A stretch of DNA of 64,000 nucleotides from contig OZ199838.1 in assembly GCA_964304625.1 (NCBI GenBank), positions 16,269,731 through 16,333,730 on the forward strand, written 5' to 3'. Both the position numbers and the translations under genes were made by a program. Below, one piece after another: positions 1-57,328 of this stretch. Position 1 is the first letter of the stretch. Each line of letters starts with the position of its first letter. Source of the stretch: Kudoa neothunni. Its lineage: Eukaryota; Animalia; Cnidaria. The notes beneath the pieces are model-generated. The model saw nothing but the letters and a program-made list of their open reading frames with translations, ran no database searches and was not told the DNA's origin.

Positions 1-1130
1 AAGATGGAATTTCTGTCGGTTATATGACCGAAGGTAATCCTTACAATCCAAAAATAAGCACATACAACGACATAAATCATACTTATTCCTTCTACTCAAA
101 AATTGTACACGGTTTTCAAGAAGATGAAATCATCCCAATTCTAATATTTTATTTGATAGATGTGATTGAAAAATATTTTTGTAACGTAATATAGTGCTGG
201 TTTTATAGATCGGAAAATATGCCACCAATAAGAATGGTGATGCTTATATCGCTTTTCCTTGTTCTACAGTAAGTGCAAATCTAAGGCTTTCAGATAGTAA
301 ATACATCTATCGGCATTTCCAAAGGGAAACTAAAACAACAAAATTTTTTGAATCAATTAAAATTGTCTCCGCTTATAATTTCGATGAATGTGTGAAATTA
401 ATGAAGGATTCATTGTTGAAAAAAGGTGGTAAGTCATATCCGTGGAGTGCAATAACCGACCAAATGCTTAAAACTGATTTTCCACCAAAAAAGGGAAGCA
501 GACAATTCGATGTAAAAATCCCTTTGATATTATCCAAATAGTTTATTTATATCTTGGTTAATTGTAGATATACAACTATAAACACAGTTTTGAAATTGAT
601 AATTACTACCGCCCCTTGGAATCCATTAGATCTTTAACCTCTATATTCAACAGGGAGCCAACTTATGTCAAACCCTTATCGTCGATTTCACCAGATGAAG
701 CCATTCAAATTCTGAATTACGTGGTTAAAAGGACGTTTGCCTATGTTATCGCCGCCTTCTTTTCTGAATCAGAGTCAATATATGGCAATGATTACGTCTT
801 TAAGACTCATGTATACAGACAACTTTATAGGAAATACTTAATAATTTTTATTATAGGAAAATAAAATTGGTTGGCAATCACAATTTATTAGTAATCAAAC
901 CAGTATACGATACTATTTCCATAGTAGATATAATTTCTCCTTAATGCATTGTTAAAAATCTGATAGACCGTAATAAAAACTTCGGCCCCCAAAGCGATAA
1001 TTTGGGAGAAAAAAAAGGATCAGATATAAGGGAAAATAGGGGCTACACAGATTTCATTGAAGATTTCCAAAGGTCTTCACAAGATAGGAAACAGAGATTG
1101 AGATACAGTGACAAAATAACAGACGAATAA
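1..1130 (+). CDS. Paralog A (5' end outside window) of the tandem surface-protein family (putative GDA1/CD39-like pseudoenzyme); no TM in last exon
   Basis: Exons <3-161, 209-511, 568-810, 857-~923, 967-1130, with GT..AG introns at the same positions as in B-G. Motifs ISVGYMTE, IAFPCS, AYNFDECV, YPWS, FPPKKGSRQFD, NKIGWQSQFISNQT. The last exon reads NRNKNFGPQ...SDKITDE* and is hydrophilic. Confidence 0.8.
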
Positions 1131-1417
1131 TCGTATTACATTAATATCATAATTCTTAGGTAATTAATTTTAGAAATAAGAATCAATAACGGTTCTCAGT
1201 GCCCACGTTCTATCTCATCATTTACAGTAATAAAAATTTCGTATAAATTGTAAAATTTTGATTATTTTAGCAGAAAAATCTTAATGATCGTCTATTTAAA
1301 CTAACGTTACTTTACGATACCTTCAATAAAATATCTATTCATTCGCCTATAATATTAATTACTTCGATTATATTATACATGGTATCAATCACTGGTATCT
1401 CTGCGTATAATCCATTA

Positions 1418-7177: not shown

Positions 7178-7560
7178 CTTTTTGAACCTCATTGTTGCCG
7201 GATGGCATTATTGTAATTTTGTGAGTGTTTTAACTAATTAATTACATTTTTTAATTCCACCTTTATTATAATAATATAGTTAATGCTCATATAATTTTAA
7301 AAAAATGAATAATGGAATTTATTCCTTTGTATCAAGAGCAATACAGATGAATATCTAACTCCACGACAAATATAAAAAAGGTTAAAAGTATCAAACAAGT
7401 GAACTTAGAATTTTGAGGTATCAGTATAATTGAAAAATATGAACATATACTATTAAATAGGTTTGTTCTAAAAATGAGTTTAAGAAGAAAATATGTTTTG
7501 ACATATATTCTGTAGGGACGGATTAATCCATGTTGCCATTTGGTAACATTGGGCCAGGGG
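7178..7560. mobile_element. Degenerate piggyBac-type MITE (its second copy hosts the MULE insertion)
   Basis: ttaa at 7174-7177 is followed by cattgttgccggatggca. The right end tgttgccatttggtaacattgggccagggg is an imperfect inverted match. Confidence 0.35.
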
Positions 7561-8089
7561 GTATAGCGAGCGTTGTCACATGACAACGTTTAGCCCTCGT
7601 TAAAGTGTGTTTTTATTTTTTAGAATGGGTTCTGACTAGATTGGAGAAAGATATAAAAAGAACAGAATTTTAATAAATCATCTTATTACAAGGTGAGGAC
7701 AAATCAAGCTTTGGATTCCATATCGTATAGTAAATATGATGATATTGTCTCCGAATTCAGTTCTAATGATGAGATGGAAGATAACTATCGTCAAAAGTAA
7801 AAAATGAACGCAAAAAATTAAATAAACAACTGATATTTTTGAACATGTTGAAGATATTACACTTGAATGTTCCGTCTATTTCAACCGATTCTCCAATGAT
7901 ACATTATTTTAACATCTTTGCATTAAGTGTAATGTTCATTTTACCTCAATAAAACAGGAATTGCTTTTTGATCTATCGAAATTATAATAAATAATTGAAT
8001 ATTACGTTTCTGACGATGGAAGAGTAATTTCTTGGTTAAAAACAAAGTAACATAAAAGCAAGCAAATGCACACTCCCGCTTATTGATAT

Positions 8090-8630
8090 AAACGGTGCCC
8101 CAATGTTGCCATTTGGCATCATTTAAGTATCTTTTTATTATTTAAAATAACTGCTCCAATTTTTGTATATTCTATAGAATATTATTTTAAATTAATCTTA
8201 ATGAGAAAATAAGTTTTTTCAGTCACCGAATTAAATCCGAGGTTCAAGGATTAACAAAAAAGACAGCAGCTGGTTATATTAACGGATCATTGGTAAGCAT
8301 TAAATCGAGTAATTCTATATGCTCTGAAAAGATATGACAAATGTAAAATTAAGTTTGGTTTTTATACATATTCTTTTAAGTTGTTAGGAGGATCATCTTA
8401 AATTTTTGAGCTAAAACATCACGTACAATTAAATTATATTACTGATTAAAATTTAATTGTATTTGAATTAAATTTAATTAATATTAATTATCAAATTCTA
8501 ATATTATTTAAATAATTAATTCAGTTAAAGTGATTATATCTTTATTTTATATTATTCGAAAATTTTTATTGAGATTGTCGTATTATTGTCTTGGTGTCAA
8601 GTTCCTCAGTAACAACTACCCTGACAGGGG
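8090..8630. mobile_element. Possible second degenerate piggyBac-type MITE
   Basis: Left end gccccaatgttgccatttggca; right end caggggttaa (ttaa at about 8631-8634). Confidence 0.3.
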
Positions 8631-8902
8631 TTAATTCAGAACAAAATTTAAAGTAAATTTAATAATTTATAATCTTTTCCAAATGATTTTTAAATAAAAT
8701 AAATTCTTAATCCTTTATACCTTTATATTTAATGATTAAATAGAATTATTAGATTATGACAATAAATAGATTATAATGATTAACAATAACTAAATTATAT
8801 TTTTTATATGATTAAATATGAAATGATCTAAATACAAGTTGTCATTTGTAAAATAAATTCGGTTTCAATCTTAAAGAAGACCATAGTTAAGATTGTTACA
8901 AT

Positions 8903-9062
8903 TAATATTCATAACACTATGAGTATGATACGACAAGTAATCTACTTAGAGATAACATTAGTTTTTATATATAGGAAATAATTAATTACTATTTTAGGGA
9001 TTCTAACGAGTGATAATTAAAGGCCATTAATTCATCTCAATAGAACCCCTCAGGTATTCTAA
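8903..9062 (+). promoter_or_regulatory. Conserved upstream non-coding block shared by paralogs B, C and D
   Basis: taatattcata..ctatga..taatctacttaga..gggattctaacRagtgataa..cattaatt..ccctcagRtattctaa is colinear with 21174-21333 and 31869-32029. Confidence 0.55.
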
Positions 9063-9215
9063 AAACCATAATTGCAGTGATTTTGTTACCTCACCTAATA
9101 TATAAATAGAACAAAAAATGATCTTTATTTGTTGATAATATAATAGATATATTATATAAATAATGAATAACATTTTTATTAACCGACGTAAATTAAAAAT
9201 CAATATTTTAGGAAT

Positions 9216-11761
9216 ATGTTGATTTTTTTGGTGTTTTCATTATTGATTTTCTCAGTACATATTATTCTATCATTCGAATTTAATGGTAAAACGGTAAGGT
9301 TACTGTTTTTAAATTAGTATACAAATTAATTTTATTAAAGGAGTTAATGTTTTATGTTGGAATGAACAGAATGCAAATATATCACTATACATGTAATTCA
9401 GACTCTTCAAAATTTTATGGGGTGGATTGTAGGGAACAAAATAAGGGTTGGTGCCATGGTATCTCCTCAATAAATCTCAGCTTGTTTTTATAACCATTAT
9501 AGTATGGAATGGAGGTCTATTACCAAGAATTGTTCTTGAAAACTACTGTATAAATAATTTTGTCGAAACAAATGGTTTATCTAGCGCGAACGTTACTTTT
9601 TTTGTATCGGCAAACAATTTAGAATTCAGGCAATAGTCTGTTGAAAATCTGTTAGATTTTATTTAATATATCTAGGATGCAGGCAATATTGTATGACGTT
9701 TCCTCAATGAATCAAATGATGGATCGACATATAACTATCGATGGCAATATTTATTTTATACATTATTCCAAATTAACGTCCTCAGATATAATATTTAATT
9801 TCAACGTGGAAACAAATGAGGGGTCAATTCCGAATAGAAGAGTAAAAAAATCAATATATATATATATATATATAAGAGAACAATATTAATAATCAATCTA
9901 ATTTTAGCATTTAAACATTAAAAAATTATTTATATTAATTCTGCTACATTAATATATTGGAATTTAGATAAATGAAGGAAATGGAGTTATATATTTGAGT
10001 GAGGAGTTGTTTTCGTTGGGTTATGTGACAGAAAAAGATCCTCAAAATGAAAATATCGTCACTTATCGAGTTGGACAAAACGAATATCCATTTTTTTCGA
10101 TATATATAACCGAGATCGGATTCATACACATAATACCTACCATAATATTTAAATATATACTAGTAATTTTAAAATAATATTGATGTTTAAATTAATGTTA
10201 TGAGTGTCCATTAGCTCGAAAAATATATTGATAGGAATGGTGAAATTATTATTGAATTTCCCTGTACAATAATAAATTCAAAAGTTCCAATAAATAGCAA
10301 TAAATTCGAAGGTTGGTTGTCGCAACTTGAAATTGATAAGGAGAAATTTTTGAAACCAATCACATTTATTGCAAAATATAACTTTCACGAGTGTGTCGAC
10401 ACAATAAAAAATGCTCTACTTGTTCCGAACTCGGACCACCCATGGAATAGTAAAACATTACAGTTGATTAATGCTAAATTTCCAACAAAATCTGGGAGTA
10501 AATACTTTGACGTATGTCGTTAGTTTAACTTGTCTAATGATGAGGTGGTCAATAATTACTTGCTTATTTATATTATAATATTACAGGTGTATGGTTTTTA
10601 CGCCAAGTCAACAACCCAAAGCAATCATCAACTTCTGCAAGATTTACAACCATTAGTAAACCAATCCAATTTATATACAACAAGTGGTGAGGATGCTTTA
10701 ACTTTGACACCCGCCGAGTCTATACCTTACGTGTACCATGTTGTTACGAGGATGTATTATTACACTCTTATTTCACATTTTACCAACACGACACTTCCTG
10801 AAAGCTACATCTATAAGTTTGACGTATAACGACTTATCATTATATTAATAATATAAATATATATTTTAAATGTAGTCCAATAGAATCGGATGGCAAAAAC
10901 AACTTATTAATAATCAAACTATGACAAGATACCTAAATGGTAAATATCGTGAAAATCTAAACACCTTTTTGAACCTTTTTAGATGTTAGTGAAACTGAGT
11001 CTCAAGATAATTTAGAAGACAACAACGAAGACCTGCCACCCAGCGAAAAATCCACTAAAAATTCTGATACTGATTCTTCTAACAAAAATGAGGAGGACAT
11101 TAAGGTCCCAAAAGCTGATGGTGATATTGATGATTCTTCAGGAAAAAGTAGGGTAGTCACAGAACCTACTCAAAATGATGATGACGATGATCTTGATGAT
11201 TCTCCAGGAAAAAGTAGTGTAGTCACAGAACCTACTCAAAATGATGATGACGAAGATCCTGATGATTCTCCAGGACAAAGTAGGGTAGTCACAGAACCTA
11301 CTCAAAATGATGATGACGAAGATCTTGATGATTCTCCAGGACAAAGTAGCGTAGTCACAGAACCTACTCAAAATGATGATGACGAAGATCTTGATGATTC
11401 TCCAGGAAAAAGTAGCGTAGTCACAGAACCTCAGCGAAATAATGACGATCCGGATGTTTCCACTGAAAAAAGTAAAATTATTATCGAATCTACAAAAAAT
11501 GATGTTGAACCTAAAGAATCTCGACAGAATGGCGATAAAAGTTCCGAAGAGCACGAAAATGACACCACTAATGTAGTAGACATTTCTAATAATAGTGATT
11601 CTGATAGGAATTCAGGTCCTCCTATTAAAGTAAGGGGACCAAAATCTTCTTTAATGGCCAAGATAATTATTCCAACATTACTAGTTATAATTCTCATATC
11701 TATTGGGCTTTTTATATTTATGTTACGAACAAAATCGAAGAAAAAAATATTGGATTTATAA
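9216..11761 (+). CDS. Paralog B: 686-aa type I membrane protein with putative GDA1/CD39-like inactive ectodomain and acidic repeat stalk
   Basis: Nine exons (9216-9293, 9341-9458, 9503-9629, 9676-9841, 9968-10162, 10215-10511, 10587-10823, 10876-10939, 10983-11761) sum to 2061 nt of open frame. Signal peptide MLIFLVFSLLIFSVHIILS, TM IIIPTLLVIILISIGLFIFML, tail RTKSKKKILDL*. Intron 3 has a GC donor. Confidence 0.9.
11129..11431 (+). repeat. Coding 66-bp tandem repeat, about 4.6 units (DDSPGKSSVVTEPTQNDDDEDL)
   Basis: Units start at 11129, 11195, 11261, 11327 and 11393, in frame within the last exon of B. Confidence 0.95.
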
Positions 11762-11869
11762 TTTTATCCAAAACCTTCTCATCATATATAAACTATTACA
11801 TAATTATGAATTAAAATTTTATTTTTCAGTTTTTGAATTATAAAACCTTTTTCACATATCTACGATCTA

Positions 11870-12775
11870 TCTACTATCTACTGTATATATAAAGATGAAA
11901 TGTACGTGTGTGTGTGTGTCAATTTTTTCCTTATAGAGAGACATATATAAAATTTTTAAAAAATTATAATGTTTCCAAAAATCGTAAAGTTATTTTTAAA
12001 GTGACAAGTATTCCCAAGAATGTTTAGAAATGGTGATTTTGTCAATTCTACGTTAATTTATCTGATTACTTGAGTTTAACACCTGCTTATGACCCGCTGA
12101 TTATTGGTTGAAGTTTATTTTCCCCATTATATGCTATTTCAAATGATGATTAACTTCTGATATCTGACTTTGTATATAAATTTAGTGTGTAAATTTAGGT
12201 ATTCATGCAGATATACTCCTTATTTGAAGAGTTTTACGTATTTGAATTGATAAATATACTTTTAAGTTTCTATTACTGGTTTTCAATACAACAAAAGTCT
12301 ACATTTATTTCATTAATAGCGAATTAGTTGTGTATGCGATTATCAGACAGATTGAAGCTTTATAGTACAAGCACGATGTCCGTGGATTTCATTGAAATCG
12401 TCCGCTATATCGGACTTTCAGTGATTAAATTCAATGCAGATGGTTATAATTTTACTTCACCCCATTATTTGAATTATTTATGTTGATATTAACGAGATTT
12501 GTGGTTGTTTCTGGGAAAAAGTGCATTAAAATTTATGTCGGGCCAAAGGATATTAATTGGAGAAATAAAAATTAATTTAATTATGTTTTCTTCTATCTCT
12601 ATTACTTTTCCTATTTTTTATACCTTAAAAAGTTAGTGGCGTACGGAGTTCCTGAGCCGGGCCAGAATTCGACTTTGTAAAATCCAACGATCAAAGAACG
12701 TTTTAAATAGCATTTTAAGGGAATTTATATAATTCAGAGATGCAAATTAAATATGACACTGACGTTAAATCATTC
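11870..12775 (+). mobile_element. Helitron-like family 1 copy, 3'-truncated
   Basis: 5' tctactatctactgtatatataaagatgaaatgtacgtgtgtgtg. Matches the 1418 and 23971 copies and joins the hAT remnant at gttaaat. Confidence 0.6.
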
Positions 12776-15007
12776 ATGCTTAATGTTGCCAATGAACTTA
12801 TTGACGATTTACGGACAAATAAAAAATAATCCAAGGAATAAAAGGTATGCCTCTGTCGGCTAGAACTGTTCATGACCGTACCATCATTATATCAAATCAA
12901 ATTCAGGCGACATAAACAGACATAAATGCGGCGCCGTTTTTCTCTCAAGCTTTGGATGAGTCAACAGACGTGAGTAATATGCCACAGTTTAGCGTGATTG
13001 CAAGGTATATTCTCGGTGACACATTGCAATATGAGAGCCTTGTTGTTTTGTCCATGAAAGGAAATACAAGAGGGGAGGACTTATTAAAGTAGTTTACCGA
13101 TTTCACCAAAGAAAAAAATTTACCAACGGATAAACTTATTTTAATGTGTGCTTATAGTGCGCCGTGTACGGTTGGTAAAAACAGAGGATTCGTAGCGCTT
13201 CTTTGTGAGCATGAAAAGAGAAACATTTTAAGAATAAAATGTATCATACATATGTAGGCGTTTGTGCTTCATGATGTTTAGCGAACAGTTAGGTGAGATA
13301 ATGTCGCTGGTCATCCTGGTGATCAACTTTATTGTTTCCCGAGAATTAAATGATTGCCAATTTAAGAATCTGCTGACAGAAATTTTCGTAAAGCAATGTG
13401 CGTTGGCTGACAAGGGGAAGGTGCTTAGTCGTTTCGCGGCTTGTCTGAGCCATATTGTGACTTTTCTTAAAATGAAAAATGTCGAGTATCCGGAGTTAGT
13501 TGACACTTAATGGCTCCTGATGTTTGACTATCTAGTAGAAATGACTGAACATCAAAACCAGCTTGACGTAAAAATGCAAGGCGTTGAAAATATAATCCTA
13601 TCCCTGCAACAAGCTGTGTTTGCATTCGAAAAAAAACTAGAATTCACCATCGCTGGCAGTAAAACAGGTCGTTTTTTACACTTTGAAAGACTGGGAGAGT
13701 TCATATATGCATGCTCAAGAATTGGCTCAACTCAGCATTTTGATCTTCAGCAGCTAGTAAGCTTTACATCTAATCTTCTTCAATCATTCAAAGAGTAATT
13801 TGGAGAATTTAGTGAGCACTGACGGCTTTTTAAGTATATAAACCATCCACATGAGTGCGAAGTAGATGGTGTTGATTTGAGTTATATCCCTGTTGTCTCC
13901 ATCAGAGATTTTGAATTCCAAGTTATTGGCCTGAAGGCCCCACACATGTGGGTAAATAAGTTCAACTTAATGCATGACGATTTGGATTTTTTTGTTTACA
14001 AGGTCAAACCTTTGGCGCAACCTCTTCGTTTGTGAACTTCAGGGTGGTTAGGCCTTCTCCATTTACGCTTTAGACATCGCAGCGTCATATTAAGGCGACT
14101 TACGTGTATGTTGTAGGGTGGGATTTTAAACCACTAAACATCCTCGTTTCGGGGCAACCACCATCCAAACCATACGCTGAACTAATCTAGAATTAGTCAA
14201 GGAATGTCGTCTGAATGTGGATGTTACCTCTAAGGAAACCAACTACTAGGTTGTATTTCGTCCCTGTACCCCGACGTTTATAAGCGCCCTAGATCTACCC
14301 TTCTATCAGGGTCCCCTCCCAACTGCAAGCAAGACCATGATAAATCGTGGACTTTTACGATTACTATGGCCTTCCTACTTAATTTCGGATTAGGAGTACA
14401 TACATGAACGCCCGCATTAAACTTGGAACTCGCAGCCTCATTGTATGCGATCTCGACATAACACCACTATGCCATGTTGTCCAGGCGACATTTGGAAAGA
14501 ATTGAATGGTGGCGAGCAGAGTTGGCGAGTCAACACAAGTGGGCAGAAATTAGGAGGCTTCAATCCGCTTTCTGCACATATTACACACTGCAGTGTATGA
14601 GTATTGCTGGACTAACAATGTTTGGCTCTTCATATTCATGTAAGCAGCCCTCCTTCACATCTAAACAGCATAAAGACCTACCTACGATAACGTTTAAAGA
14701 CTAAAGTCTCAACGCCTTCATGAAGATCAACCTAACCAATAACTATTCTGACTACAAACCATCTCGAAAATGATGCAAAAACAAATATCACATTAATTAC
14801 TACAAATATTTTGTTTTATTAGAACATAAAAAATATTATTTAGTAAATATAATTTGGAGATTTTTGTGCTTTTAAGGGTTGTAATCGTATAACACTTATA
14901 TGCATTAGTGTTTTTTGCTTCAAGCATAGCATGTGGCTTTCATGGAGCTGAATTTAAAAATATATTACATTTGCGGATCTTTGGGCCGAAAAAGTTCACG
15001 ACCCCTG
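12776..15007 (+). mobile_element. Decayed, 5'-truncated hAT transposon (SPIN/GTF2IRD2-like), interrupted by a SINE
   Basis: MPLS-ARTV, ALDESTDVSNMPQFSVIARY (near 12950), GKVLSRF, NQLDVKMQG, TMFGSSYSCKQ. The right end aagttcacgacccctg is the reverse complement of a CAGGGGTC..AAC hAT TIR. Confidence 0.85.
13987..14489 (-). mobile_element. tRNA-derived SINE, copy 2
   Basis: Reverse complement aligns end to end with 48225-48723. 7-bp TSD atttgga at 13980-13986 and 14490-14496. Removing it restores the hAT frame (..MHDDLE/RIEWWRAEL). Confidence 0.85.
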
Positions 15008-16500
15008 CTCCAATGAATTTTGGTAATTATTCACCTTAACGAGGAGTTAATGGCTTTATAAGTGATTTGTTTGTTCTTCGTAAAATACGAGTTTTTTTAA
15101 TTCTCTAAAATGTTAGTAATATACGATTTTGAAATACTATGACTAAAAATATAAAATCTGGAAAATTATATCAAGTTTACACTCCAATGAATTGTTGGGG
15201 TTAAAAATTACTCCAGATTATTTTTCCAACGACTGTTAGATAAAATAATCATTATTTTATCATTTAAATGTTAGGTTTATTTGGCGGCTCAATCTGAAGT
15301 TATATGGTTATTACCTATGGTAATGATCCCGTGACTTCCTTATTTATTTCCACCATTACGATAATTGAGATAGATCTCACCAGTAATAATTAAATTGGTG
15401 AAAAAAATTCTTTTAAAGTATTTATGAATACTTTAGAACTGATATATCGTAAGGATCTGACGAGATTGAAAGTTTTGAGAATTTGGGTCAATTCATAATC
15501 CCACAATCAATAATGTTGGCCTATTGTGGTGTTTTTTCCGTTTAATAGATTTATTCTTTATAATTGCTTGTAACATTTACAAAAAAAATCTTTTGAATTG
15601 ATATGGTTATGAAAAATTCTGTTAAAATATGGCAAATTTACTATATCTTTCCATTAATTGAAAGAAACATCCTTGAAGTCCAAAATCCTAAGAGTTCGAC
15701 TTTATCTATTCTGCTATAACTCAGCATATCATATAAATGAACATTATTTTTAAGATTTGAATATTTTTATGGAAAATTGATAAGAAATCCGCTATTGCTT
15801 GTTTTAGATGTACGAAACTGTCGAAAAATACATTCTGAGTGTTTGCGAATCTTATTCTAATTCAATATTCTATTTTGTAGCGCAAATAATAATTAAAATA
15901 TTTATTGTATGATATAAATTTGAAATTTACTCAAACCTTAAGCTTTAATTAATAATTTTCAGTGCGGATTTTAACGAATATAGTTATCGTAGGATTATGA
16001 GGATTACTGGTCGGATGTTAGTTGTTTTACAGCTGAATCTAGCTATGGAATTATGTTTGTTTTTATCTTCTGAAATCAAATATTTTTTATGGTTTGAATG
16101 GAGAAATAAAATATTGGGGTTATTTTTTACCCCATAATTCATCGAAATGCAGTCGATTTTTAGTACATTGTATATTAGAGGGTTCATTTTCGAATAATTT
16201 CTTTAAGCGATAATCGTTCATTCTATAGACAGATCACAAATTGAACTCATATTTAGATTCACTTTATAAAATTGAAATGTATTAACTTTTTGAACCCCAT
16301 TGTTGCCGGATGGCATTATTGTAATTTTGTGAGTGTTTTAACTATTTAATTACATTTTTTAATTCCACCTTTATTATAATAATATATTTAATGTTCATAT
16401 AATTTTAAAAAAATGAATAATGGAATTTTTTCCTTTGTATCAAGAGCAATACAGATGAATATCTAATTCCACGACAAATACAAAAAAAGGTTAAAAGTAT

Positions 16501-19500
16501 GGCAGTGTCTATTTTACCGGAGCCGGCAAATTAGCCCATGCGCGTAGGACTAGCTATTTTGCCGGACGCGCTTTTTCTCTTAAAATAATAATTCAATCGC
16601 TACAATTTTTTCCTAAAAATATCTTTTATAAATGCGGAATATAAATTTAGTTTCATTAATGCAGTGACGAATTTTAACATAGCTAATTTTTATCCATAAT
16701 ATCCAAATGAAAATACAGTAAAGTAAAACTATTTGGCCAATTCGTATTTAAAATTTTTATAATTAGGTAAATGTTTTTATCAGATGATTGATACACCACT
16801 AAAATTTAATAAAATGTTGAGTATTCTACTTTAAATAATAAATGTTTGAAATTAGCTTGTATTGCAACGCCAAATAATTGTGACTGTTTAACTTCCACAT
16901 AAAATTATATTTGAATATAATATATCGATATTGGTGTTGTTATTATTACTACTATCATCATTACCATAATCATAATTTTCTTTTTTTTCTTAAACCAATA
17001 ACTGTTTGAAATACACCTTTTGGTCTACCTCTCAATTTCACTACTGTTGGCAGCTTAATTCCTATAATTTTATGAATTTAGCAAAATGGACAAAAGATAC
17101 ACACCCTTCAAAGATGGATTTTTAGTTGTGGTATCATCTACAATATTCGGGATCTCCATATCAATTATTGATGATGGAACATTATCATTAACTGCTTCTA
17201 GTACATCCTCATTCTCTAATCGTGATTCCTCAGTAACTAAACACGAAATAAAAATTCTACTAAAGACAATATCATTAATTACATGTTGGGATTGAAATCT
17301 CTTGATTGTTTATGATGACAGATTCAGACATTAAATTGAACTAAATTAAGTTGATATATGAATAGTGGAAAAAATAGTCACCTTATCCAGAGAATCCCCA
17401 TTGGAAATAAGAGAGATTAATTCACCTAAAATCTTTTTTAATGAATCATATTGACTTTTTGTTTTTTCTGACCCTAGCAAAGCTATTTTCTTAAAAAGAA
17501 TTTCTAGCTCCCTGTATCGCTTAAAAGCTGAATTCGGAACATAGCACTGACTCGAAATTTCTGTAATACTTGGTTGCACACAACACGAAGGATTTTGAAG
17601 ATATAAATTTTTTGTCATTTGAATAAATGACAGGTAATATTCTTTTTGCTATCTCTTATTACAAATTTTCTCTTCATATAAATTCACATTCATTATTTTT
17701 CTAGCGTAAATAATATGCCTACATGGTATCTCCATACTTACGTAGAAACAACATGTACAACTATTGGGATCAGGATTGGCATAGGATTCGATATGATTAT
17801 TTATTTCATCCTGCATAATATTATACGCATATGAAGTCAACAATGTTTTATATTGTTCGTTAATGTCTGAATTTAATTTCTCAACAGTTTGGGTTGTCCA
17901 CTCTCTAACTGCTTTACTCTCACGCTCAGTCCTCATACTTGATAAATAAATAAATAAATAAGCAGTTCGCTGAAAAAGACTTCAATTGTTGATAATTTTT
18001 TTAATTTTGGAATTTATGCATTCTAATCGATTATTTGTTCTATTTAAAAAAGTACCCTTTAGGTTCATGTATGCAGGGCACCATTCATGTTTGATTGGAT
18101 CCCAAGATTTATTATAATAAGTAATGATTTTTGTTACATGTAATATTTAACAATTCATGGTAAATTTCATAAATTTTTGGATCATTGGTATAGCAAAGCT
18201 TTTGAATCAACTCTAAGGCAGTTTTCCTTTCGGCTTTGTTTATTCCCATTCTTAATGTAGAGATTTCTCTCCCAAGTGTTCTTAAGACATGGTACATGCA
18301 TAAGTTTGTACTTACGTTAGGAAATATAGATCTTATAGAGTTTCTTTCAATCATGTCTTTATCCGTAATGAAACAAACTGTTTTGGTTGACATTTCCTCA
18401 TTATGTTTAAGTAGAGATTGACATAACCAGGTAACAGTCACGGTACTCTCCTCAGATAAAAGAGCAATAGCTCCTGTTTGACTTTGTCCGAAGTCAAATA
18501 AATAAACAGGCGCATATACAATGACATACGATTATTGATTAATTTATAAGTGGCATCCATAAATACTAGTTCGGGAAATTTTATAATAGCGTTTTTCATG
18601 TAAAGGTCTTGGAAAAATATTCCAGTCATTCCATTTGAATTATTGTGCAATATTTCGATAGTTGCAATTGGGTGAGAATTTTTTATTGAATTAAACAACT
18701 CCGAAATATCTGACGAAACATTTTTTTTAGTGTTTGGATATAATTATGGATTTGCTTCAACGAAACCTTTTTTTGTGATTGGTTCATGATTTCTACTCGT
18801 ACTCTTTTTAAATTTCCATCATAAAAATTTATCAATTTTTATAAGATTCTTGCTTTCTTCATCTAATTTTGTATTCATTGGTAAAAAATCCCTAAAATGC
18901 TCATTTCTGTTGCAGCTGTGAGTAAGATCCAATTTTCTTATAACTAACATATTCATGTTTTTAGGAACTCGCAGAGTAATGAAGAAATTGCAACCACTTT
19001 TATCGCTGTTGATTTTTCTCTTCCCAGCACTTTTAGATTGTATCTGAATTCAAATTAATTACATCAATTTTTATATAGATAATTACATTTTTACCACCAT
19101 GAACACAACAAAAAGTGGCTTCATAATAAACAAGATCAGAGTTCATGTCTCTATCAAATTTTTTTAGGGCAGTTGAGATTTTTCTAGAGTCTCGGATCCA
19201 GTAACAAAAGTTGTTCCGCTTTGAGTACTTATCCATGAATTCTTTAGCCTTTTAAAAGTTTGTAAATGCATTTCCGACCATAGGTTCAGATGTAATATCC
19301 TGAATTAGTAGTGTTTGATCAGACTCTCCTTCCATAGTGATTCTACTCGCGACTATCAAAATTACAACCGCACGCTAGAGGGTATTTTACCCGTTTATGC
19401 TGTTATAACACATAAAATTAGATTAATTATATAAATAATACAGATTTATAAAAATTAAATGTCATTTATAATGAAACTTATGAATGAGTTTCAAATATCC

Positions 19501-19650
19501 TCAATGTATTTTGATACCTAATTATTAATTAAAATATAAATGAAACTAAATTTATATTCTGCATTTATAAAAGATATTTTTAGGAAAAAATTGTAGCGAT
19601 TGAATTATTATTTTAAGAGAAAAAGCGCGTCCGCCAAAATAGACACAGCC
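16501..19650 (-). mobile_element. Full-length Mutator/MULE transposon with disrupted transposase (MULE DDE plus SWIM finger)
   Basis: 9-bp TSD taaaagtat at 16492-16500 and 19651-19659, single at the empty site 7383-7391. TIRs over 100 bp (ggcagtgtctatttt.../...aaaatagacacagcc). Motifs FPELVFMDATYK, FITDKD, LCMYHVLR, SWIM CTCCFYVSMEIPCRH and AT-hook RGRPK. Stops and frameshifts present. Confidence 0.95.
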
Positions 19651-21173
19651 TAAAAGTATCAAACAAGTGAACTTAGAATTTTGAGGTACCAGTATAATTG
19701 AAAAATATGAACATATACTATTAAATAGGTTTGTTCTAAAAATGAGTTTAAGAAGAAAATATGTTTTGACATATATTCTGTAGGGACGGATTAATCCATG
19801 TTGCCATTTGGTAACATTGGGCCAGGGGGTATAGCGAGCGTTGTCACATGACAACGTTTAGCCCTCGTTATAAGTGTGTTTTTATTTTTTAGAATAGGTT
19901 CTGACTAGATTGGAGAAAGATATAAAAAGAACAGAATTTTAATAAATCATCTTATTACAAGGTGAGGACAAATCAAGCTTTGGATTCCATATCGTATAGT
20001 AAATATGATGATATTGTCTCCGAATTCAGTTCTAATGATGAGATGGAAGATAACTATCGTCAAAAGTAAAAAATGAACGCAAAAAATTAAATAAACAACT
20101 GATATTTTTGAACATGTTGAAGATATTACACTTGAATGTTCCGTCTATTTCAACCGATTCTCCAATGATACATTATTTTAACATCTTTGCATTAAGTGTA
20201 ATGTTCATTTTACCTCAATAAAACAGGAATTGCTTTTTGATCTATCGAAATTATAATAAATAATTGAATATTACGTTTCTGACGATGGAAGAGTAATTTC
20301 TTGGTTAAAAACAAAGTAACATAAAAACAAGCAAATGCACACTCCCGCTTATTGATATAAACGGTGCCCCAATGTTGCCATTTGGCATCATTTAAGTATC
20401 TTTTTATTATTTAAAATAACTGCTCCAATTTTTGTATATTCTATAGAATATTATTTTAAATTAATCTTAATGAGAAAATAAGTTTTTTCAGTCACCGAAT
20501 TAAATCCGAGGTTCAAGGATTAACAAAAAAGACAGCAGCTGGTTATATTAACGGATCATTGGTAAGCATTAAATCGAGTAATTCTATATGCTCTGAAAAG
20601 ATATGACAAATGTAAAATTAAGTTTGGTTTTTATACATATTCTTTTAAGTTGTTAGGAGGATCATCTTAAATTTTTGAGCTAAAAACATCACGTACAATT
20701 AAATTATATTACTGATTAAAATTTAATTGTATTTGAATTAAATTTAATTAATATTAATTATCAAATTCTAATATTATTTGAATAATTAATTCAGTTAAAG
20801 TGATTATATCTTTATTTTATATTATTCGAAAATTTTTATTGAGATTGTCGTATTATTGTCTTGGTGTCAAGTTCCTCAGTAACAACTACCCTGACAGGGG
20901 GTTAATTCAGAACAAAATTTAAAGTAAATTTAATAATTTATAATCTTTTCCAAATGATTTTTAAATAAAATAAATTCTTAATCCTTTATACTTTTATATT
21001 TAATGATTAAATAGAATTATTAGATTACGACAATAAATAGATTATAATGATTAACAATAATTAAATTATATTTTTTATATGATTAAATATGAAATGATCT
21101 AAATACAAGTTGTCATTTGTAAAATAAATTCGGTTTCAATCTTAAAGAAGACCATAGTTAAGATTGTTACAAT

Positions 21174-21333
21174 TAATATTCATAACACTATGAGTATGAT
21201 ACGACAAGTAATCTACTTAGAGATAACATTAGTTTTTATATATAGGAAATAATTAATTACTATTTTAGGGATTCTAACGAGTGATAATTAAAGGCCATTA
21301 ATTCATCTCAATAGAACCCCTCAGGTATTCTAA
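21174..21333 (+). promoter_or_regulatory. Conserved upstream block (copy before C)
   Basis: Duplicate of 8903-9062 and homologous to 31869-32029. Confidence 0.5.
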
Positions 21334-45772: not shown

Positions 45773-47785
45773 ATGCTTATTTATTGGGTGTATCCGTTGT
45801 TAATTTTCATTATTCCTATATTACCTACAGAAATAGAAAATAAAACTGTATGAATCGTTGGCTATTACCTACAAATGATAACATTTATTTTACACAGAAA
45901 GTATTGTTATATGTGGAATATGGCGTTCTGCACGCCACACATTATTCGTGTGTAACTGATCAGACTCAATTTTTTGGAGTAAAATGTAACGAAGAATACG
46001 AGGAAAGATGCTATTGTACAATAATTGTTGATAATTATTTATTCTAAAACCAATATTAAGATGTAAACACTTTGGATGCTAATCATGTCGACATCGAAAA
46101 TGATTGTTTAGAATACTTCAATAATTATGTCGATCTCACCAACGCTAGTGTTACCGTGGTAGTACCTGATAAAACATTAGAGCATCGGTAGTGAATTTCA
46201 TTATTCTTAATAATGGAATGAGATTTCGATCAATAATTAATATTTTTAGATTTCAAAGTAAATTTTTCAACAACTGGCCAGAAAACGAAAATAAATTTCG
46301 AAATCTTACAATTAATAAAAAGTTTATGGAAATACGTTATTATGAACTGACTGCATCTGAAAAAACGTTTTATCATTATGTTTCCTCGAACGAAGAAACA
46401 ATTGACACGAACACTGTAAGCATAATAATTAATTTAATTTTTTTCAATCACCTTATTAAGGGAGAGGGACAAAAATATGAAACACAGGTATATGAAAAAT
46501 ATATTCTCTAATAAAAAAACTTAATACGGATTTATTTGAAAAATATATACACATTAATATCAACATATATATATATATATATAACAATTAAGGTTTACAG
46601 ACAATATGGTCACATATCCTTGAGTGATGTGTTGAGTATTGGATACATTACAGAAAAAAATTCAAAAAATAAAGATACATTTGATTACTCCATCAATTCA
46701 TTGATATATTCATTTTATGCCAAATATATACCAAAAATGGGTCTCAACGATATCATTCCTAAACTATTATTCAAACTTATTTTAGTATATGAACTTTTAT
46801 AAAATAAAATGTTTTATTTTTTAGGATGGAAAATATAATTATGATCAAGAAAATGAAATCATCATCATTGATTTCTCCTGTTCATTGATAAATACTATAA
46901 CGTCATTTTCCAAAGATAAATACACTAGTTGGTTTGCCAATATGAATGGTGATAGTGGAAAATATTTTAAACCTATCAATATTAAAGCAGCCTTTAATAT
47001 TTTTAAATGTTTGGACCTAATAAATGAAGTGACATTTGTTTCAAACCAAGCACATCCTTGGAATAATAGTACTATTAAACTGATTTCAGATGGATTTCCT
47101 AAAAAGACTGGAATCAGATACTTTCGAGTAATCAAAATATGTATTAATAATTTTATTCATGAAAAATTAATAATAATAATAATAAATAATAATGCTAAAC
47201 TTTTAGGTATATGGGTTTTATTCTAGTTTATTGGACCAAAATAACAACTATTCACTAGCGAATTTCGAAAATATAATACAAAAAATTATGGAATCACCTA
47301 AACCACACTTTGAAGTACCTACATTCATATTTACTCATTTAAAAATAATTTAGAGTATGGTTCATGCTATGTACTTTTATTCCCTTCTTTCTTATATGGA
47401 CAAAAATATAATAACAGAAGATAACAATAAACTTTATAAATTCGAAGTACATAAGCATAATAAATATAATCGAAGGATACATCTTAATATAGTCGTCTTA
47501 TTCGGATTGGAAAAAAGAACTTATCAGTGGCGCTGCGATATTAAAGCTCACACCAAGTGACTTTTATGTTTATATGTATTAACTATAGAAAATGCTCCTT
47601 GAAAAATAGATTTCAATGAAACCGACAAGAAAAATAGTAGCCTGGCTGTAACGTATAAGCAAAACGAATCTAACAAGTCAAAAACTGTATTGGTGGTTGT
47701 AGTTGTTATTACACTTATTGTAATAATAACAGTCGCATTATCAATTGGAATTTATTACTATGTCTCCAAAAGAAACCAAAAATGA
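45773..47785 (+). CDS. Paralog F: type I membrane protein with very short stalk; needs an extra 39-nt intron (47315-47353), otherwise a pseudogene
   Basis: MLIYWVYPLLIFIIPILP signal, FFGVKC, NASVTVVVPD, LTASEKTF, micro-exon 46461-46487, LSIGYITE, DFSCS, HPWN, FPKKTG, SDWKKELI. TM VLVVVVVITLIVIITVALSIGIYYYV, tail SKRNQK*. Confidence 0.8.
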
Positions 47786-53094: not shown

Positions 53095-55023
53095 CGGTAA
53101 ATAGTCGCGAAATAAAGTTTAATTATATCCCCATGTGACGAATGATCTCCTTCATTCTATTATCACGTGATACATTAAAATTACGTTTTCTAATGACCAT
53201 AAATAATATAAAAGGTGGCTTCTAAGTTGGACAGCTTATACCTAGCATAATTATTCTTTTTCATCCATATATTTCATGTTTAAGAATATTATTTTTTGCA
53301 AACTTTAATTTTAACATTTGCCGATAAAATCGATTTATTCAACAATGTAATAAGTATAGAAGCTTAATTTAACCTAGATCATCTTACTTTTGCGACAGTT
53401 AAAAAGCGACATTTCTATCAGCGCTAAGTATATTCGACAGCACTATTTTATTTTATGAGATGCTCTCTGATGTTTCATCAAAACATTAAATTAACCAATA
53501 GTTTTATTTAAAAGATATGTAGACAGAATAACACATAAAAATTAATAATTTTGTTGGGAAATATAGCAGATAGAATGGCGCTACTGCGTGGGACTCACAG
53601 ATGGACAAGTAACGAGTTCGGATCCGATCCCATTATGATGTGTGATCGTAATTAACCTATTGTGCAGAAGGAAATGTGTGTAGGAATTAGTAGATGATAT
53701 TAGAATGGTTTATATTTTTATTCAAATATTATATACGCTTGCGCATTATGATATTTGAGATTATAATAACGTTCCTAAATTTATAATTAGTATATTCGCT
53801 ATTAAACATTAGTTCTCGTCATAATAATAACAACGGAGGATAACTTTAGTTAATGTTTTTAGAATGTTATCATATTTTCTCTGTGATCTTATGGCTATAA
53901 AATTAACATAAAATCTATATAATTGATTTTTTTTTGAAATTATCATTAAAAATATATATTTAAGATAAAAAAGTAAAAATATTTTTTATAAATTCTTTGA
54001 TCATAAAAATACCTTCATAATAACAGGTGATAATATTTATTAATTAATAGTTACAATTATTCGATCCTTAGTAAACTTCATAATGACAACAAATCATATT
54101 TATTAAGAAATAATTAAAATTAATAATCTTAAAAATATTTTCAAATTAGGTGATGATAATATTTAATAAGTAATAATTCGATTAAATTAGCTCATTCGTG
54201 AGTGTGATTAAGGTTGTTATTAAAAATTAATGATTTTCATCTGAACGTTAAAATTTTTAAAATTTTGTACACATCAATGACTCATGATGATGTTTTCGAC
54301 TTTATTCGATATTTAAAATTATAAAATCTAATAACAGAAATATTGAGGATGTGTAGTATTCAAGAGATGAGATCAAAACGAGTTTTCTAAAAATAGGTAA
54401 AATGAAAATTAAATATAGTTTCCGATTTCTAAAACTTACAATTCTCTTTAATATAATTTTTTTATGATTACTATATTTATATTAATAACCTTGTAACATT
54501 TACTTTGTATGAATCACACCCGGATTAATTCTAATAGATTAATTACAATATATTAATTATATTTCATTAATGGCTTGGTAACGACCAAATTTATTAACTT
54601 TTTAGTACACAAAAAAAAATTTATTCCAATTTTTATTGGATGGCCAAATTATAATTTATACTATTAGATCAGATGTTAAGTTAATAAAATGTAAAATTCT
54701 ATATAAATTCAAAAACCGATTAATAAAGTATACTCATTAAAGTAAATGTGCATTATTAATCCTTATGTGACTAAAAAAATTAAATTTAATTAATATAATA
54801 TTATTAATTCGCTAATTTGCGTCGAATAAACTGAAACAAAGTAGTGACGAATAATATCAATAGACTTTCAAACTAAAGGAGATACTTATAGTAAACCTCA
54901 CATTTACAGATTGATTGTGAAATCAATGGAAATATTAGTTAATCATTTATTTAGACATAAATTATTATTAGAGAATACACTATATCTATTGAAGTTATTA
55001 TTTATCAATATTATTGAAACAAG

Positions 55024-57328
55024 ATGTGGAATTTTTTGATTTATTCTGTTTTTCTCGGCTGTTTCCATAATGTGTTCAATGAAGGAGATTTGAAAACAAC
55101 AGTATAATATATTATTCCACTAACAACACTAATAATCCAAACTATAGGAATTATTATTATACTTCGACGACAGCAACTTTATTGTTGAAAATTATGAATG
55201 TCCTCTCCGACAGGAGTATTTCTGGGGCGTCCAATGTATTAAACCAAATAAAATTGATTGTCCTGGTAACATATTTGTGAATCACATATTTTTCCTAATA
55301 TAATTAAAAAGAACTTGGAGAGAAAGAAGAAACAAGAATTGATTATGAAGACGAATGTCTAAATAAAGCTTTCACTGAGCAGTCCCTAACAGAAGCTAAT
55401 GTTACTATTTTACTACCTCACAAAATTTTACAACCAGGGTAGTAGGCCATTATTTTTTACAAAAGTGTTAGTTTTATATTTGGCACAGATTGATGGTTGA
55501 ATATGATGCTTGGTACAGTAATTTGCTTAATCGCAGTATAACTGTTGATACACACGAGAATCCCATCTACTATAAAAGCTTGGCATTATCCGAAAGGACT
55601 TTCTTCGAATATTTGGCCTCAAATGTCGGATTAAATCCAGAAGGCTCGGTAATTTTACCAATGGAATAGAATTGAGTATTGTTTAAATATTTATTTGTTT
55701 AGTCAACTGAACCAGAAAGTTTTATATGGGTAATTGGATATTATGGTCACCTTACTTTATTTTATAAACTATGTTTATTTCGATATTTAACTATGATATC
55801 AAATAACAATTATATTATTTAATATCGCCTATGATAAAATATTATTTTTTAGGAATATGGAGATCATGGTTATATCATCATAGATGAAAATAGAATATCA
55901 ATTGGATATTTAACTGAAATGAATCCTCAAAATCCCGATATAAAAATATATAGATCCATAAATGAAGAGTTAGCATACTTTTCAAAGTCTATACTCGGTC
56001 TCGGTAACAATAATATCCTACCCATTCTAATATATCATATGATAAATGTAATATTTAAATTATACTTTGAATTATTTATATTATTTTGAATATTATTTAG
56101 GCTAGAAAGTTTTTAATAAATCAGGATAAAAATCCTGAATTCGAATTTCCTTGTGCAAAGAGAGATGCAACTATCACGATTACTGATCCAAACTTTCTAA
56201 GTTGGCCACAGGTAGCAGAAAAATTCTCCGGAGAATTAAAGATTGTTACCGCATATACTTTCGACGGTTGTACACAACTGATAAAAGATGCACTTTATAC
56301 CTTAAATGATGATCATCCATGGAATGATATAAAAAAGAAATTGCTTGAAATTGAATTTCCAGTAAAAACTGGAAGCAATGAATTCGATGTACGTAATACT
56401 TTATAAAAAAAATTTAGAAAATAATAAAATATTTCTTATAATAGCTATATAACTACAAAACAAATAATCATGCTGGTTACTACCGCTCATTGGATTCTAT
56501 GCGATCATTAACTTCTATTAATAATCAGCGAAAACTTGGTACCGAATATGGTGAGACGTGGGATATAGCAGATTCACCGATATACTTAAATGAAGTTGTC
56601 CAAAGAACGTTTTATTATACGTTACTTTCCATGCTTTCAACTACAGAAAGTCAGCGTGGCAATGAATACGTCTATAAGAATAATGTATATTGGTTACATC
56701 CATATTGAATTATTTATCTTTTTAGGACAATGAATTATTGTGGATCGATCAATTTATCACTTACCAAACTATGCTAAGAATGGCGGAAGGTAAATGAAAT
56801 TTGTTTCTTCAATAATTATCAAAATAATCTGTAATCAAATAAAAAATAGAAAAACAAAAGGAAAAGGAAAATGAAAAAAGCGAAGAACCTGAAATATCTG
56901 AAGAATCCATAACTCCTGACAAGACCTCTGAGGATGTAGTTGAACCCAGTGGTAATGAAGGAGAATCTGAGTCACAATCAACTGATGAAAAAGAGAGTGG
57001 TTCTCAAGATAATAGTGACAAGTCAAGCGAGTCATCGAAAGATAATGAAGGTGACGGCGAATCTCAGGAAACTACTGAAGAAGAAAAGGAGTCTTCGAGT
57101 GATGATTCGGAAAAATCAGAAGATCAACAAAGTGAGAGCAGTGATGATCAATCTTCCGAAGATGGCAGTTCCGACGGTTCGACCACAGTTGCCAGTCGAA
57201 AAAGTGAATCAAACTCTAAATTGGTAGCCAAAATCGTAGTTCCAATCGTGATAATAGTTATCCTCCTATCAATTGGAATATACATCTTCATGGTCAAAAG
57301 AAAATCCAAAAGAAATGAAGGTGTTTGA
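55024..57328 (+). CDS. Paralog G: type I membrane protein, same family, Ser/Glu/Asp-rich stalk
   Basis: MWNFLIYSVFLGCF signal, FWGVQC, EANVTILLP, LALSERTFFEYLASN, micro-exon 55703-55729, ISIGYLTE, YFSKSILGLGNN, EFPCA, HPWN, FPVKTGS, LLWIDQFI. TM IVVPIVIIVILLSIGIYIFMV, tail KRKSKRNEGV*. Confidence 0.88.

What the first reader, a model, noticed from the sequence alone, without database searches (positions are those of the whole stretch)
1..57328. Tandem array of six diverged surface proteins that look like catalytically dead CD39/GDA1 ecto-NTPDases
Seen: six co-oriented paralogs about 10 kb apart, with shared intron positions, six conserved Cys, and a signal peptide, stalk and anchor. Established: E-NTPDases have five apyrase conserved regions (human CD39, recalled: YGIVLDAGSSHT, TPVYLGATAGMR, IITGQEEGAYGWITIN, FGALDLGGASTQVTF, then YTHSFLCYG, DPC, GNYQQC, and GWTLGYM). 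Inference by eye: these map in order to ELMFYVGMNRMQIYHY, ANVTFFVSA, LTPSEMIF/LALSERTFFEYLASN, GVIYLSEELFSLGY, YFSKSILGLG, EFPC, KYNFHEC and RIGWQKQL. ACR spacings in B are about 70/44/27/240 aa, against about 77/42/40/237 in CD39. Both DxG phosphate loops, ATAG and the catalytic second Glu of ACR3 are replaced in every paralog where the segment is visible. This suggests an enzyme fold repurposed as an expanded, fast-evolving surface family (variant antigen, decoy or host-binding receptor).
Basis: partly seen in the sequence, partly recalled or inferred. Interest (0 to 1): 0.92.

Follow-up and report, generated by a model that had tools for sequence, protein, structure and literature searches.

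The report
Dead apyrase-derived surface protein gene array
A fish-muscle parasite (very probably the myxozoan Kudoa neothunni) carries a long tandem array of membrane-anchored surface proteins whose outer domain appears to descend from the ATP-degrading enzyme CD39/apyrase but has lost its phosphate-binding loops, so an enzyme fold seems to have been recycled into a fast-diversifying surface coat.

Summary
The six co-oriented, intron-rich paralogs are real, but B and C are 98% identical twins of a 12.27-kb duplication. The array belongs to a family of at least 33 copies, about 25 of them in this cluster.

Each complete copy has a signal peptide, a ~400-aa ectodomain, a low-complexity stalk, one transmembrane helix and a short basic tail. 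Intron positions are shared by ~25 members.

Direct tests (Pfam, PDB and 1.84 billion proteins, exon by exon) find no NTPDase. Profile-profile comparison does. Exon 5 aligns without gaps to the ACR4 region (P=6e-5, z≈10 against shuffles). Exon 6 aligns to the adjacent Cys motifs (P=3e-4). A chained alignment runs in order from ACR3/ACR4 to the ACR5 Trp.

The N-terminal half (ACR1-3) gives no statistical signal; only motif spacing fits. No member keeps the ACR1 or ACR4 glycine loops. A conserved acidic residue may still match the ACR3 Glu.

I count five conserved Cys, not six. No RNA data exist. The spliced protein could not be folded here.

Verdict: NTPDase descent and loss of catalysis are likely (~0.7); the biological role is unknown. 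This scan reached the same reading for other copies in this genome (s1-701620).

The parts
1..1127 (+). Paralog A, 5' end cut by the window edge. Exon 5 core 3-161, exon 6 212-511, exon 7 568-810, exon 8 857-919. Stalk and anchor not resolved.
   Evidence: Exon HMM hits; ORF pieces after exon 8 show no clear transmembrane exon.
9216..11761 (+). Paralog B, complete nine-exon gene. Exons: 9216-9293 (signal peptide), 9341-9446, 9503-9629 (followed by a GC-AG intron), 9676-9841, 9968-10162, 10215-10511, 10587-10823, 10876-10939, 10983-11761 (stalk, transmembrane helix, tail, stop).
   Evidence: Splice sites and the open 681-aa reading frame. The 66-nt repeat has 4.7 copies at 11123-11431.
9968..10162 (+). 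Exon 5 of B. It corresponds to NTPDase ACR4 plus the following strand and helix (Y.VFSKSFLGLG region). The DxGG loop is replaced.
   Evidence: hhalign against 119 bacterial NTPDases: P=6.4e-5, score 32.9, against 12.5±2.0 for 60 column shuffles. Tool hhalign: P=0.0048.
10215..10511 (+). Exon 6 of B. FPC and YNF..C correspond to the NTPDase PC and GNF..C cysteine motifs and the helix after them.
   Evidence: hhalign against eukaryotic NTPDases: P=3.1e-4. Tool hhalign: P=5.9e-4. The AlphaFold helix 57-69 of exon 6 lies on helix 250-263 of a modelled bacterial NTPDase.
21488..23862 (+). Paralog C, the near-identical twin of B. Exons 1-8 at 21488-21565, 21613-21718, 21775-21901, 21948-22113, 22238-22432, 22485-22781, 22857-23093, 23146-23209. 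The stalk has only 1.9 repeat copies. The last exon is interrupted by a frame change before the transmembrane segment (23575-23859).
32362..34575 (+). Paralog D. Signal peptide from 32362. Exon cores 32482-32586, 32648-32770, 32815-32976, 33167-33358, 33409-33705, 33778-34014, 34068-34124. Ser/Thr/Asn-rich stalk and transmembrane helix in the last exon, ending at 34575.
45773..47785 (+). Paralog E. Signal peptide from 45773. Exon cores 45898-46002, 46063-46185, 46251-46412, 46596-46784, 46831-47127. Exon 7 is split (47207-47284 and 47354-47446). Short stalk and transmembrane exon at 47603-47785.
55024..57328 (+). Paralog F. Signal peptide from 55024. Exon cores 55148-55252, 55314-55436, 55496-55642, 55856-56047, 56104-56388, 56445-56684, 56726-56788. 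Acidic Ser-rich stalk, transmembrane helix and basic tail at 56843-57328.
7364..24800 (.). Two copies of a ~12.27-kb segmental duplication that carries B and C together with their flanks.
   Evidence: Direct repeats with 12268-12272 nt spacing and 88-100% identity.

Best explanation
**What it is.** The window holds six members (five distinct) of a tandem birth-and-death array of type I membrane glycoproteins. The genome is very probably that of the myxozoan fish parasite Kudoa neothunni.

**Architecture.** Each protein has a signal peptide, an ectodomain of about 400 aa, a low-complexity stalk, one transmembrane helix and a short basic tail. The stalk varies between copies: acidic 22-aa repeats in B and C, Ser/Thr-rich in D, Ser/acid-rich in F.

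**Origin (partly shown).** The ectodomain descends from a GDA1/CD39 nucleoside triphosphate diphosphohydrolase. This is shown for the C-terminal lobe. For the N-terminal lobe it is inferred from size and motif spacing only.

**Loss of catalysis (shown at sequence level).** The two glycine-rich phosphate-binding hairpins are gone in every member. ACR4 is clearly replaced. ACR1 is replaced under the by-eye mapping. The proteins most likely neither hydrolyse nor clamp nucleotides.

**Role (inferred).** The stalk holds the non-catalytic fold away from the parasite membrane, where it serves as a binding or coat module at the parasite-host interface. It diversifies by tandem duplication, by change in stalk repeat number and by local replacement of short patches.
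For: **Anatomy and family size**
- Exon 6 has at least 33 matches in the genome. About 25 lie in C1:16.157-16.528 Mb and 30 of the 33 are free of stops.

**Similarity to NTPDases**
- Exon 5 profile against 119 bacterial NTPDases: hhalign P=6.4e-5, gapless over all 64 columns in global mode. Sixty column shuffles gave 12.5±2.0 (maximum 16.7) against an observed 32.9. The reversed query scored 10.9.
- Exon 6 profile against about 90 eukaryotic NTPDases: P=3.1e-4, placed directly downstream of the exon 5 match.
- The scan's own hhalign tool gave P=0.0048 and P=5.9e-4 at template columns 211-254 and 284-308.
- An independent gapless profile score of my own gave z≈5 for both exons.
- A chained profile alignment of exons 5-8 gave z=5.2-8.3, with 0 of 150 shuffles reaching the observed score. 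Its path is collinear through ACR4, FSKSFLGLG, PC, GNF..C, QP.L..F, CF.A.Y..LL and the ACR5 Trp. With the bacterial profile it extends back into ACR3.
- Motif spacing in B matches real NTPDases.
- The invariant Cys of exon 6 fall on Cys that are invariant in NTPDases.

**Loss of catalytic loops**
- At the ACR4 columns, 0 of 22 members have the Asp or the Gly-Gly.
- The same genome keeps a canonical NTPDase with all five ACRs on chromosome 2. The enzymatic job is therefore covered elsewhere.

**Selection and organism**
- dN/dS is 0.25-0.47 between older paralogs, so the genes are functional.
- The assembly statistics match the published K. neothunni genome: 40.26 Mb, N50 12.04 Mb, three chromosome-scale contigs plus one small contig, and short introns (46-126 nt in B; published median 49 bp) (PMC12239612).
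Against: - No Pfam GDA1_CD39 hit on any exon.
- The PF01150 model run over the whole genome hits only the canonical gene.
- Exon profiles against PDB sequences find no NTPDase.
- Exons 2, 3, 4 and 7 show no significant similarity, even when restricted to the expected band.
- hhalign probabilities are modest (64% and 39%), because each query is a single short exon without secondary-structure information.
- An AlphaFold model of exon 6 alone (pLDDT 78) finds no NTPDase by Foldseek or VIA-align. A fragment taken out of context is a poor test, though.
- No RNA evidence: 0 reads in three metatranscriptome runs, which is no test.
- No fold test of the whole ectodomain was possible.
Confidence: 0.7

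Rival explanations
1. Chimeric origin. Only the C-terminal lobe (exons 5-8) derives from an NTPDase. The N-terminal ~140 aa (exons 2-4, with three conserved Cys) is an unrelated module.
For: Exons 2-4 give no signal against any NTPDase profile: chained z ranges from -1.5 to 0.7 and banded z is about 0.
Against: The ACR2-ACR3 and ACR3-ACR4 spacings (41 and 30 aa) match real NTPDases (39-44 and 29-30 aa). With the bacterial profile the chained alignment extends from ACR4 back into exon 4 at ACR3, adding about 5 bits. The total ectodomain size equals a complete NTPDase domain. A half ASKHA fold is unlikely to be stable on its own.
Confidence: 0.12
2. Orphan surface family with no NTPDase ancestry. 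The similarity in exons 5 and 6 is chance or convergence.
For: Every sequence-to-profile search was blank. The hypothesis was targeted, since I compared against NTPDases only and could not run a library-wide profile-profile search.
Against: Two separate exons each beat all shuffles (z about 5-10) under two scoring schemes. They land next to each other, in the right order and in the register predicted beforehand. Invariant Cys fall on invariant Cys.
Confidence: 0.13
3. Still an active, extremely divergent ecto-nucleotidase or a nucleotide sensor. It would use the conserved acidic cluster (l-D-E-D) at the former ACR4 and the T-x-S-E of exon 4.
For: An acidic residue is conserved in 15 of 19 members at the place that may match the ACR3 catalytic Glu, and Asp/Glu are enriched in the ACR4 hairpin.
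Against: Both glycine-rich phosphate-clamp loops that define the ASKHA nucleotide site are absent in all members. ATAGMR is also absent. A canonical NTPDase exists elsewhere in the genome.
Confidence: 0.05

Closest known systems
GDA1/CD39 ecto-NTPDases (Pfam PF01150), such as vertebrate NTPDase1-3/8, cnidarian ENTPD1-like proteins and the Legionella-type bacterial NTPDases
   Same: Ectodomain size. Collinear profile similarity over the ACR4 hairpin, the following strand-helix (Y.FSKS.LG.G), the PC and GNF..C cysteines, the P...G..F strand and the ACR5 Trp. Extracellular display on a membrane anchor.
   Different: No Pfam hit. The ACR1, ACR2 and ACR4 signatures are erased in all members. Five rather than ten (or four) conserved Cys. 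Topology is signal peptide plus a C-terminal transmembrane helix with a repeat stalk, not N- and C-terminal transmembrane helices. There are at least 33 copies in tandem arrays, against one to a few enzymes per genome.
Tandemly repeated NTPases of Toxoplasma and Neospora (PMC4915099)
   Same: Parasite NTPDase-family genes amplified in tandem, with altered activity in some copies.
   Different: Those keep the apyrase conserved regions and are secreted dense-granule enzymes. Here the motifs are gone and the proteins are membrane-anchored.
Pseudoenzyme surface or secreted expansions in other parasites, for example the inactive trans-sialidase-like proteins of Trypanosoma cruzi (from my own knowledge, not tested here)
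   Same: An enzyme fold that has lost catalysis, expanded into a large, fast-evolving surface family at the host interface.
   Different: A different fold and lineage. No expression, localisation or binding data exist for the family described here.
Lineage-specific expanded membrane protein families reported in the myxozoan Sphaerospora molnari (bioRxiv 10.64898/2026.02.11.705288)
   Same: A myxozoan with duplicated membrane protein families proposed to serve immune evasion or attachment, together with MULE transposon expansion. A MULE relic lies in this window at 18112-18441.
   Different: Those families are VSP-, RIFIN/STEVOR- and ETRAMP-like. That paper mentions no apyrase, NTPDase or CD39.

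Membership tests
GDA1/CD39 NTPDase (PF01150) | Pfam GDA1_CD39 model matched above the gathering score | tested here: not met
   Tested exon by exon only. No hit on B exons at E<=10. The model run on the whole genome hits only C2:7278507-7279569 and weakly C1:885630, not the array. The joined protein was not submitted.
GDA1/CD39 NTPDase (PF01150) | ACR1 phosphate loop (h-h-h-D-A-G-S-S/T-G-T) | tested here: not met
   The exon 2 consensus is .LL.Y..........Y.C. None of 21 members has a DxGS loop. The homology of this segment rests on mapping by eye only.
GDA1/CD39 NTPDase (PF01150) | ACR2 (ATAGMR) | tested here: not met
   Exon 3 ends in aNVT..V.d..le. There is no ATAG and no profile signal.
GDA1/CD39 NTPDase (PF01150) | ACR3 (G-x-x-E-G ... 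W ... N) with the catalytic Glu | tested here: inconclusive
   Exon 4 keeps T.S(E/D)..F..Y..SN, acidic in 15 of 19 members. The chained alignment with the bacterial profile puts this Glu on the ACR3 Glu, but the segment is not significant on its own.
GDA1/CD39 NTPDase (PF01150) | ACR4 phosphate loop (D-x-G-G-A-S-T-Q) | tested here: not met
   The region is homologous by profile alignment (P=6.4e-5), but the Asp and the Gly-Gly columns hold other residues in 22 of 22 members.
GDA1/CD39 NTPDase (PF01150) | ACR5 (G-W-x-L-G) | tested here: inconclusive
   Exon 8 consensus is igWq.eF. Its best hhalign placement in all three profiles is on the ACR5 Trp, but P is about 0.25-0.4.
GDA1/CD39 NTPDase (PF01150) | Significant profile-profile similarity to the family | tested here: met
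   Exon 5 P=6.4e-5 and exon 6 P=3.1e-4. The matches are collinear. Shuffle controls and two scoring schemes agree. This covers only the C-terminal half.
GDA1/CD39 NTPDase (PF01150) | Two-lobed ASKHA three-dimensional fold | not testable with these tools
   The spliced protein has no reference and was not submitted. Exon 6 folded alone (pLDDT 78) gave no informative structural match.

The most novel reading that the evidence does not exclude
The array is a diversity-generating surface-antigen system of a myxozoan, built on a dead ecto-NTPDase fold. Tandem birth-and-death, changes in stalk repeat number and short hypervariable patches would supply antigenic or ligand-binding variation at the interface with fish muscle. 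The patches are illustrated by B against C: 12 substitutions in about 30 nt in otherwise 98-100% identical twins, with 18 nonsynonymous against 5 synonymous codon changes overall. Expression might be variant or mutually exclusive.
Probability: 0.2. Interest if true: 0.8.

Novelty: new variant of a known kind. Interest (0 to 1): 0.62.

Why it matters
Ecto-NTPDases are known parasite virulence factors because they degrade host danger signals (PMC8630654). A large family that keeps the fold but drops the chemistry would be a new use of it. I found no report of an expanded catalytically dead GDA1/CD39 family, nor any mention of apyrases in myxozoan genome papers.

Myxozoans are economically important fish parasites. 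Their surface biology is almost unknown and their genomes are full of unannotated fast-evolving genes. This family was missed by every sequence database searched. It offers candidate surface markers and a concrete, testable model for how these reduced cnidarians meet the host.

Tried and rejected
**Direct searches, all blank**
- Pfam on the eight B exon pieces.
- PF01150 over the genome: only a canonical NTPDase was found.
- Exon 6 profile against 1.84 billion proteins: one 82-aa metagenome fragment (P0001) plus bacterial repeat-protein false positives.
- Exon 4 and exon 5 profiles against PDB sequences.
- ESM Atlas feature search with exon 6.

**Structure**

**N-terminal exons**
- hhalign, banded hhalign, gapless profile scoring and the chained alignment were all non-significant.

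**RNA**
- Three metatranscriptome runs under the same species label held no reads of gene D. That is no test of expression.

**Organism**
- Nematode origin was considered and dropped: no cuticle collagen N-domain and no SL1.

**Donor for the B/C hypervariable patches**
- None was found among the roughly 25 members I hold.

**Limits of the work**
- No intron-free paralog exists among those examined, so no reference spanning several exons was available.
- The joined (spliced) protein was not sent to any search, family or fold tool; all such calls were made exon by exon by reference. Joining happened only inside my own scripts, to check that the B model reads open and to chain exon profiles in a dynamic-programming alignment.


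Full report
**Observation**

The window is AT-rich (about 28% GC) and has no long ORFs.

A self-comparison of stop-to-stop pieces, followed by iterated exon HMMs, shows six collinear copies:
- A: 1 to about 1000, with its 5' end cut by the window edge
- B: 9216-11761
- C: 21488-23862
- D: 32362-34575
- E: 45773-47785
- F: 55024-57328

B and C are near-identical twins of a 12.27-kb segmental duplication. They differ at 28 of 1270 coding nucleotides.

By reading splice sites I built a nine-exon model for B. It has introns of 46-126 nt, one of them GC-AG, and it reads open for 681 aa. The protein has these parts:
- a signal peptide
- an ectodomain of about 400 aa
- 4.7 copies of a 66-nt acidic repeat
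- a transmembrane helix
- a basic tail

C, D, E and F have the same layout with different stalks. The tail of A is unresolved.

Exon order, exon sizes and intron places are the same in about 25 members that I could fetch. I count five conserved ectodomain Cys, not six.

**Family size and organism**

Exon 6 has 33 matches in the genome. About 25 lie between C1:16.157 and 16.528 Mb, so the window shows only part of the array.

The genome has 40.26 Mb in four contigs: 17.15, 12.04 and 11.05 Mb plus one small one. It lacks nematode markers.

These figures match the published Kudoa neothunni assembly, which was recovered from yellowfin tuna data (PMC12239612):
- 40.2 Mb total
- N50 of 12.0 Mb
- three chromosomes plus a circular mitochondrial genome
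- median intron length of 49 bp

Earlier notes of this scan name the same species. The sequencing runs that hold the DNA carry a label shared with very large WGS and RAD-seq runs, which fits a host label.

**Direct homology tests are blank**

- Pfam on single exons gives nothing.
- PF01150 over the whole genome finds a canonical NTPDase on chromosome 2 with all five ACRs, but not the array.
- An exon 6 profile against 1.84 billion proteins finds only an 82-aa metagenome fragment.
- Exon profiles against PDB sequences find no NTPDase.

By ordinary criteria the family is an orphan.

**Profile-profile tests**

I collected 119 bacterial and about 90 eukaryotic NTPDases. Each exon alignment (20-25 members) was then compared with these profiles.

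| Test | Result |
|---|---|
| Exon 5 vs bacterial profile (hhalign) | P=6.4e-5, score 32.9; global mode gapless over all 64 columns |
| Exon 5, 60 column shuffles | 12.5±2.0, maximum 16.7 |
| Exon 5, reversed query | 10.9 |
| Exon 6 vs eukaryotic profile (hhalign) | P=3.1e-4, immediately downstream of the exon 5 match |
| Scan's hhalign tool, 60-sequence mixed alignment | P=0.0048 (exon 5) and P=5.9e-4 (exon 6), columns 211-254 and 284-308 |
| My own gapless profile score | same diagonals, z about 5 |

In the global exon 5 alignment the family hairpin lies on the ACR4 hairpin, and the family Y.FFSK....G lies on Y.VFSKSFLGLG. In the exon 6 alignment YNF..C plus its helix lies on GNF..C plus its helix.

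I also ran a chained alignment of the exon profiles, in which profiles rather than a protein are chained:
- Exons 5-8 give z=5.2-8.3, with 0 of 150 shuffles reaching the observed score.
- The path is collinear through ACR4, FSKSFLGLG, PC, GNF..C, QP.L..F, CF.A.Y..LL and the ACR5 Trp.
- With the bacterial profile the path reaches back into ACR3.

**What is not shown**

- Exons 2, 3, 4 and 7 alone give no signal, even within the expected band.
- For the N-terminal lobe only spacing speaks for homology. B has 66/41/30/240 aa between the mapped motifs. Four real NTPDases have 75-89/39-44/29-30/192-254 aa.
- AlphaFold on exon 6 alone gave pLDDT 78 but no structural match.
- The helix of that model at 57-69 does coincide with helix 250-263 of a modelled bacterial NTPDase under the hhalign register. 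This is only a consistency check.
- The whole spliced ectodomain could not be folded or searched, because it has no reference. That step was left out.

**Catalytic state**

At the columns aligned to the ACR4 D-x-G-G, none of the 22 members has the Asp or either Gly. The consensus there is x-l-D-E-D. No member has a DxGS loop in exon 2 or an ATAG in exon 3.

Exon 4 keeps T.S(E/D)..F..Y..SN. Its acidic residue may be the ACR3 Glu.

With both phosphate clamps gone, hydrolysis is unlikely. A canonical enzyme exists elsewhere in the genome.

**Evolution**

- Older paralog pairs have dN/dS of 0.25-0.47, so the genes are constrained but fast-evolving.
- B and C differ by 18 nonsynonymous and 5 synonymous codon changes. 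These cluster at residues 63-73 and 339-370, while their introns differ by 2.2%.
- No donor for these patches was found among the copies I hold.
- Stalks differ in repeat number (4.7 copies in B, 1.9 in C) and in composition between copies.
- Transposon relics (MULE, a hAT-type zinc finger) lie between the genes.

**Interpretation**

Most likely (about 0.7) this is an NTPDase-derived, non-catalytic ectodomain displayed on a stalk, expanded as a surface family of a muscle-dwelling myxozoan. Its ligand and role are unknown. A binding or coat function at the host interface is my inference.

The rivals are a chimeric origin, a true orphan family with chance similarity, and residual enzymatic activity.

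No paper I could search describes such a family. This scan reached the same reading for other copies in this genome (s1-701620), which is not independent evidence.

- Read laying was given 3001 letters.
- No toxin, effector or virus is involved.

Noticed in passing
window 9503-9540 against 21775-21812, and 10626-10735 against 22896-23005: B and C are 98-100% identical elsewhere, yet they differ by 12 substitutions in about 30 nt at the start of exon 3 and by 11 in 110 nt of exon 7. Nearly all are amino-acid changing. No donor sequence was found among the ~25 family members I hold.
   Followed up: partly
window 9630-9675: Intron 3 of B uses a GC donor (GC-AG). The reading frame closes only with this choice.
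   Followed up: partly
window 23243-23862: The last exon of C changes frame relative to B before the transmembrane segment. It needs either an extra intron or an alternative C-terminus. C also has 1.9 instead of 4.7 copies of the 66-nt stalk repeat.
   Followed up: partly
window 32440-32481: Intron 1 of paralog D is 42 nt long, in frame and free of stops. Retaining it would insert 14 residues after the signal peptide instead of breaking the protein.
   Followed up: no
window 18112-18441 (-), 30246-30653 (-), 12952-13092 (+): Transposon relics lie between the paralogs: a MULE transposase domain (E=8e-9), a Spin-doc/hAT-type zinc finger (E=4e-6) and a hAT-like fragment.
   Followed up: partly
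window 37448-39656 (+): An unrelated multi-exon gene is embedded in the array, with long ORFs (up to 203 aa) and one weak fibronectin type III match (E=0.009).
   Followed up: partly
window 52911-53103: An intergenic tandem repeat with a 31/62-nt period and about 3-5 copies.
   Followed up: no
L003 (G000:C2:7277500-7281000): A canonical NTPDase gene with all five apyrase conserved regions intact (DAGSTGSR, ATAGMR, GVLEG, ELGGAS and the ACR5 Trp motif). It is the likely functional enzyme of this genome. A run of N follows it.
   Followed up: partly
L004 (G000:C1:884500-887500, - strand): A second, divergent ASKHA-like gene with a DIGGSSLQ hairpin and a weak PF01150 ACR1 match (E=0.02). It could be another NTPDase relative or an intermediate form.
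   Followed up: no
L020 (G000:C1:10920001-10930000), 8244-8705: A distant family member has the same ectodomain exons but a quite different stalk made of NIPTVST-type repeats. Stalks seem to be exchanged or to evolve independently of the ectodomain.
   Followed up: no
exon 5 alignment against the two NTPDase profiles: Exon 5 resembles the Legionella-type bacterial NTPDases (FSKSFLGLG) more than the eukaryotic ones (P=6e-5 against 0.02). Exon 6 shows the reverse. No inference about origin was drawn.
   Followed up: no
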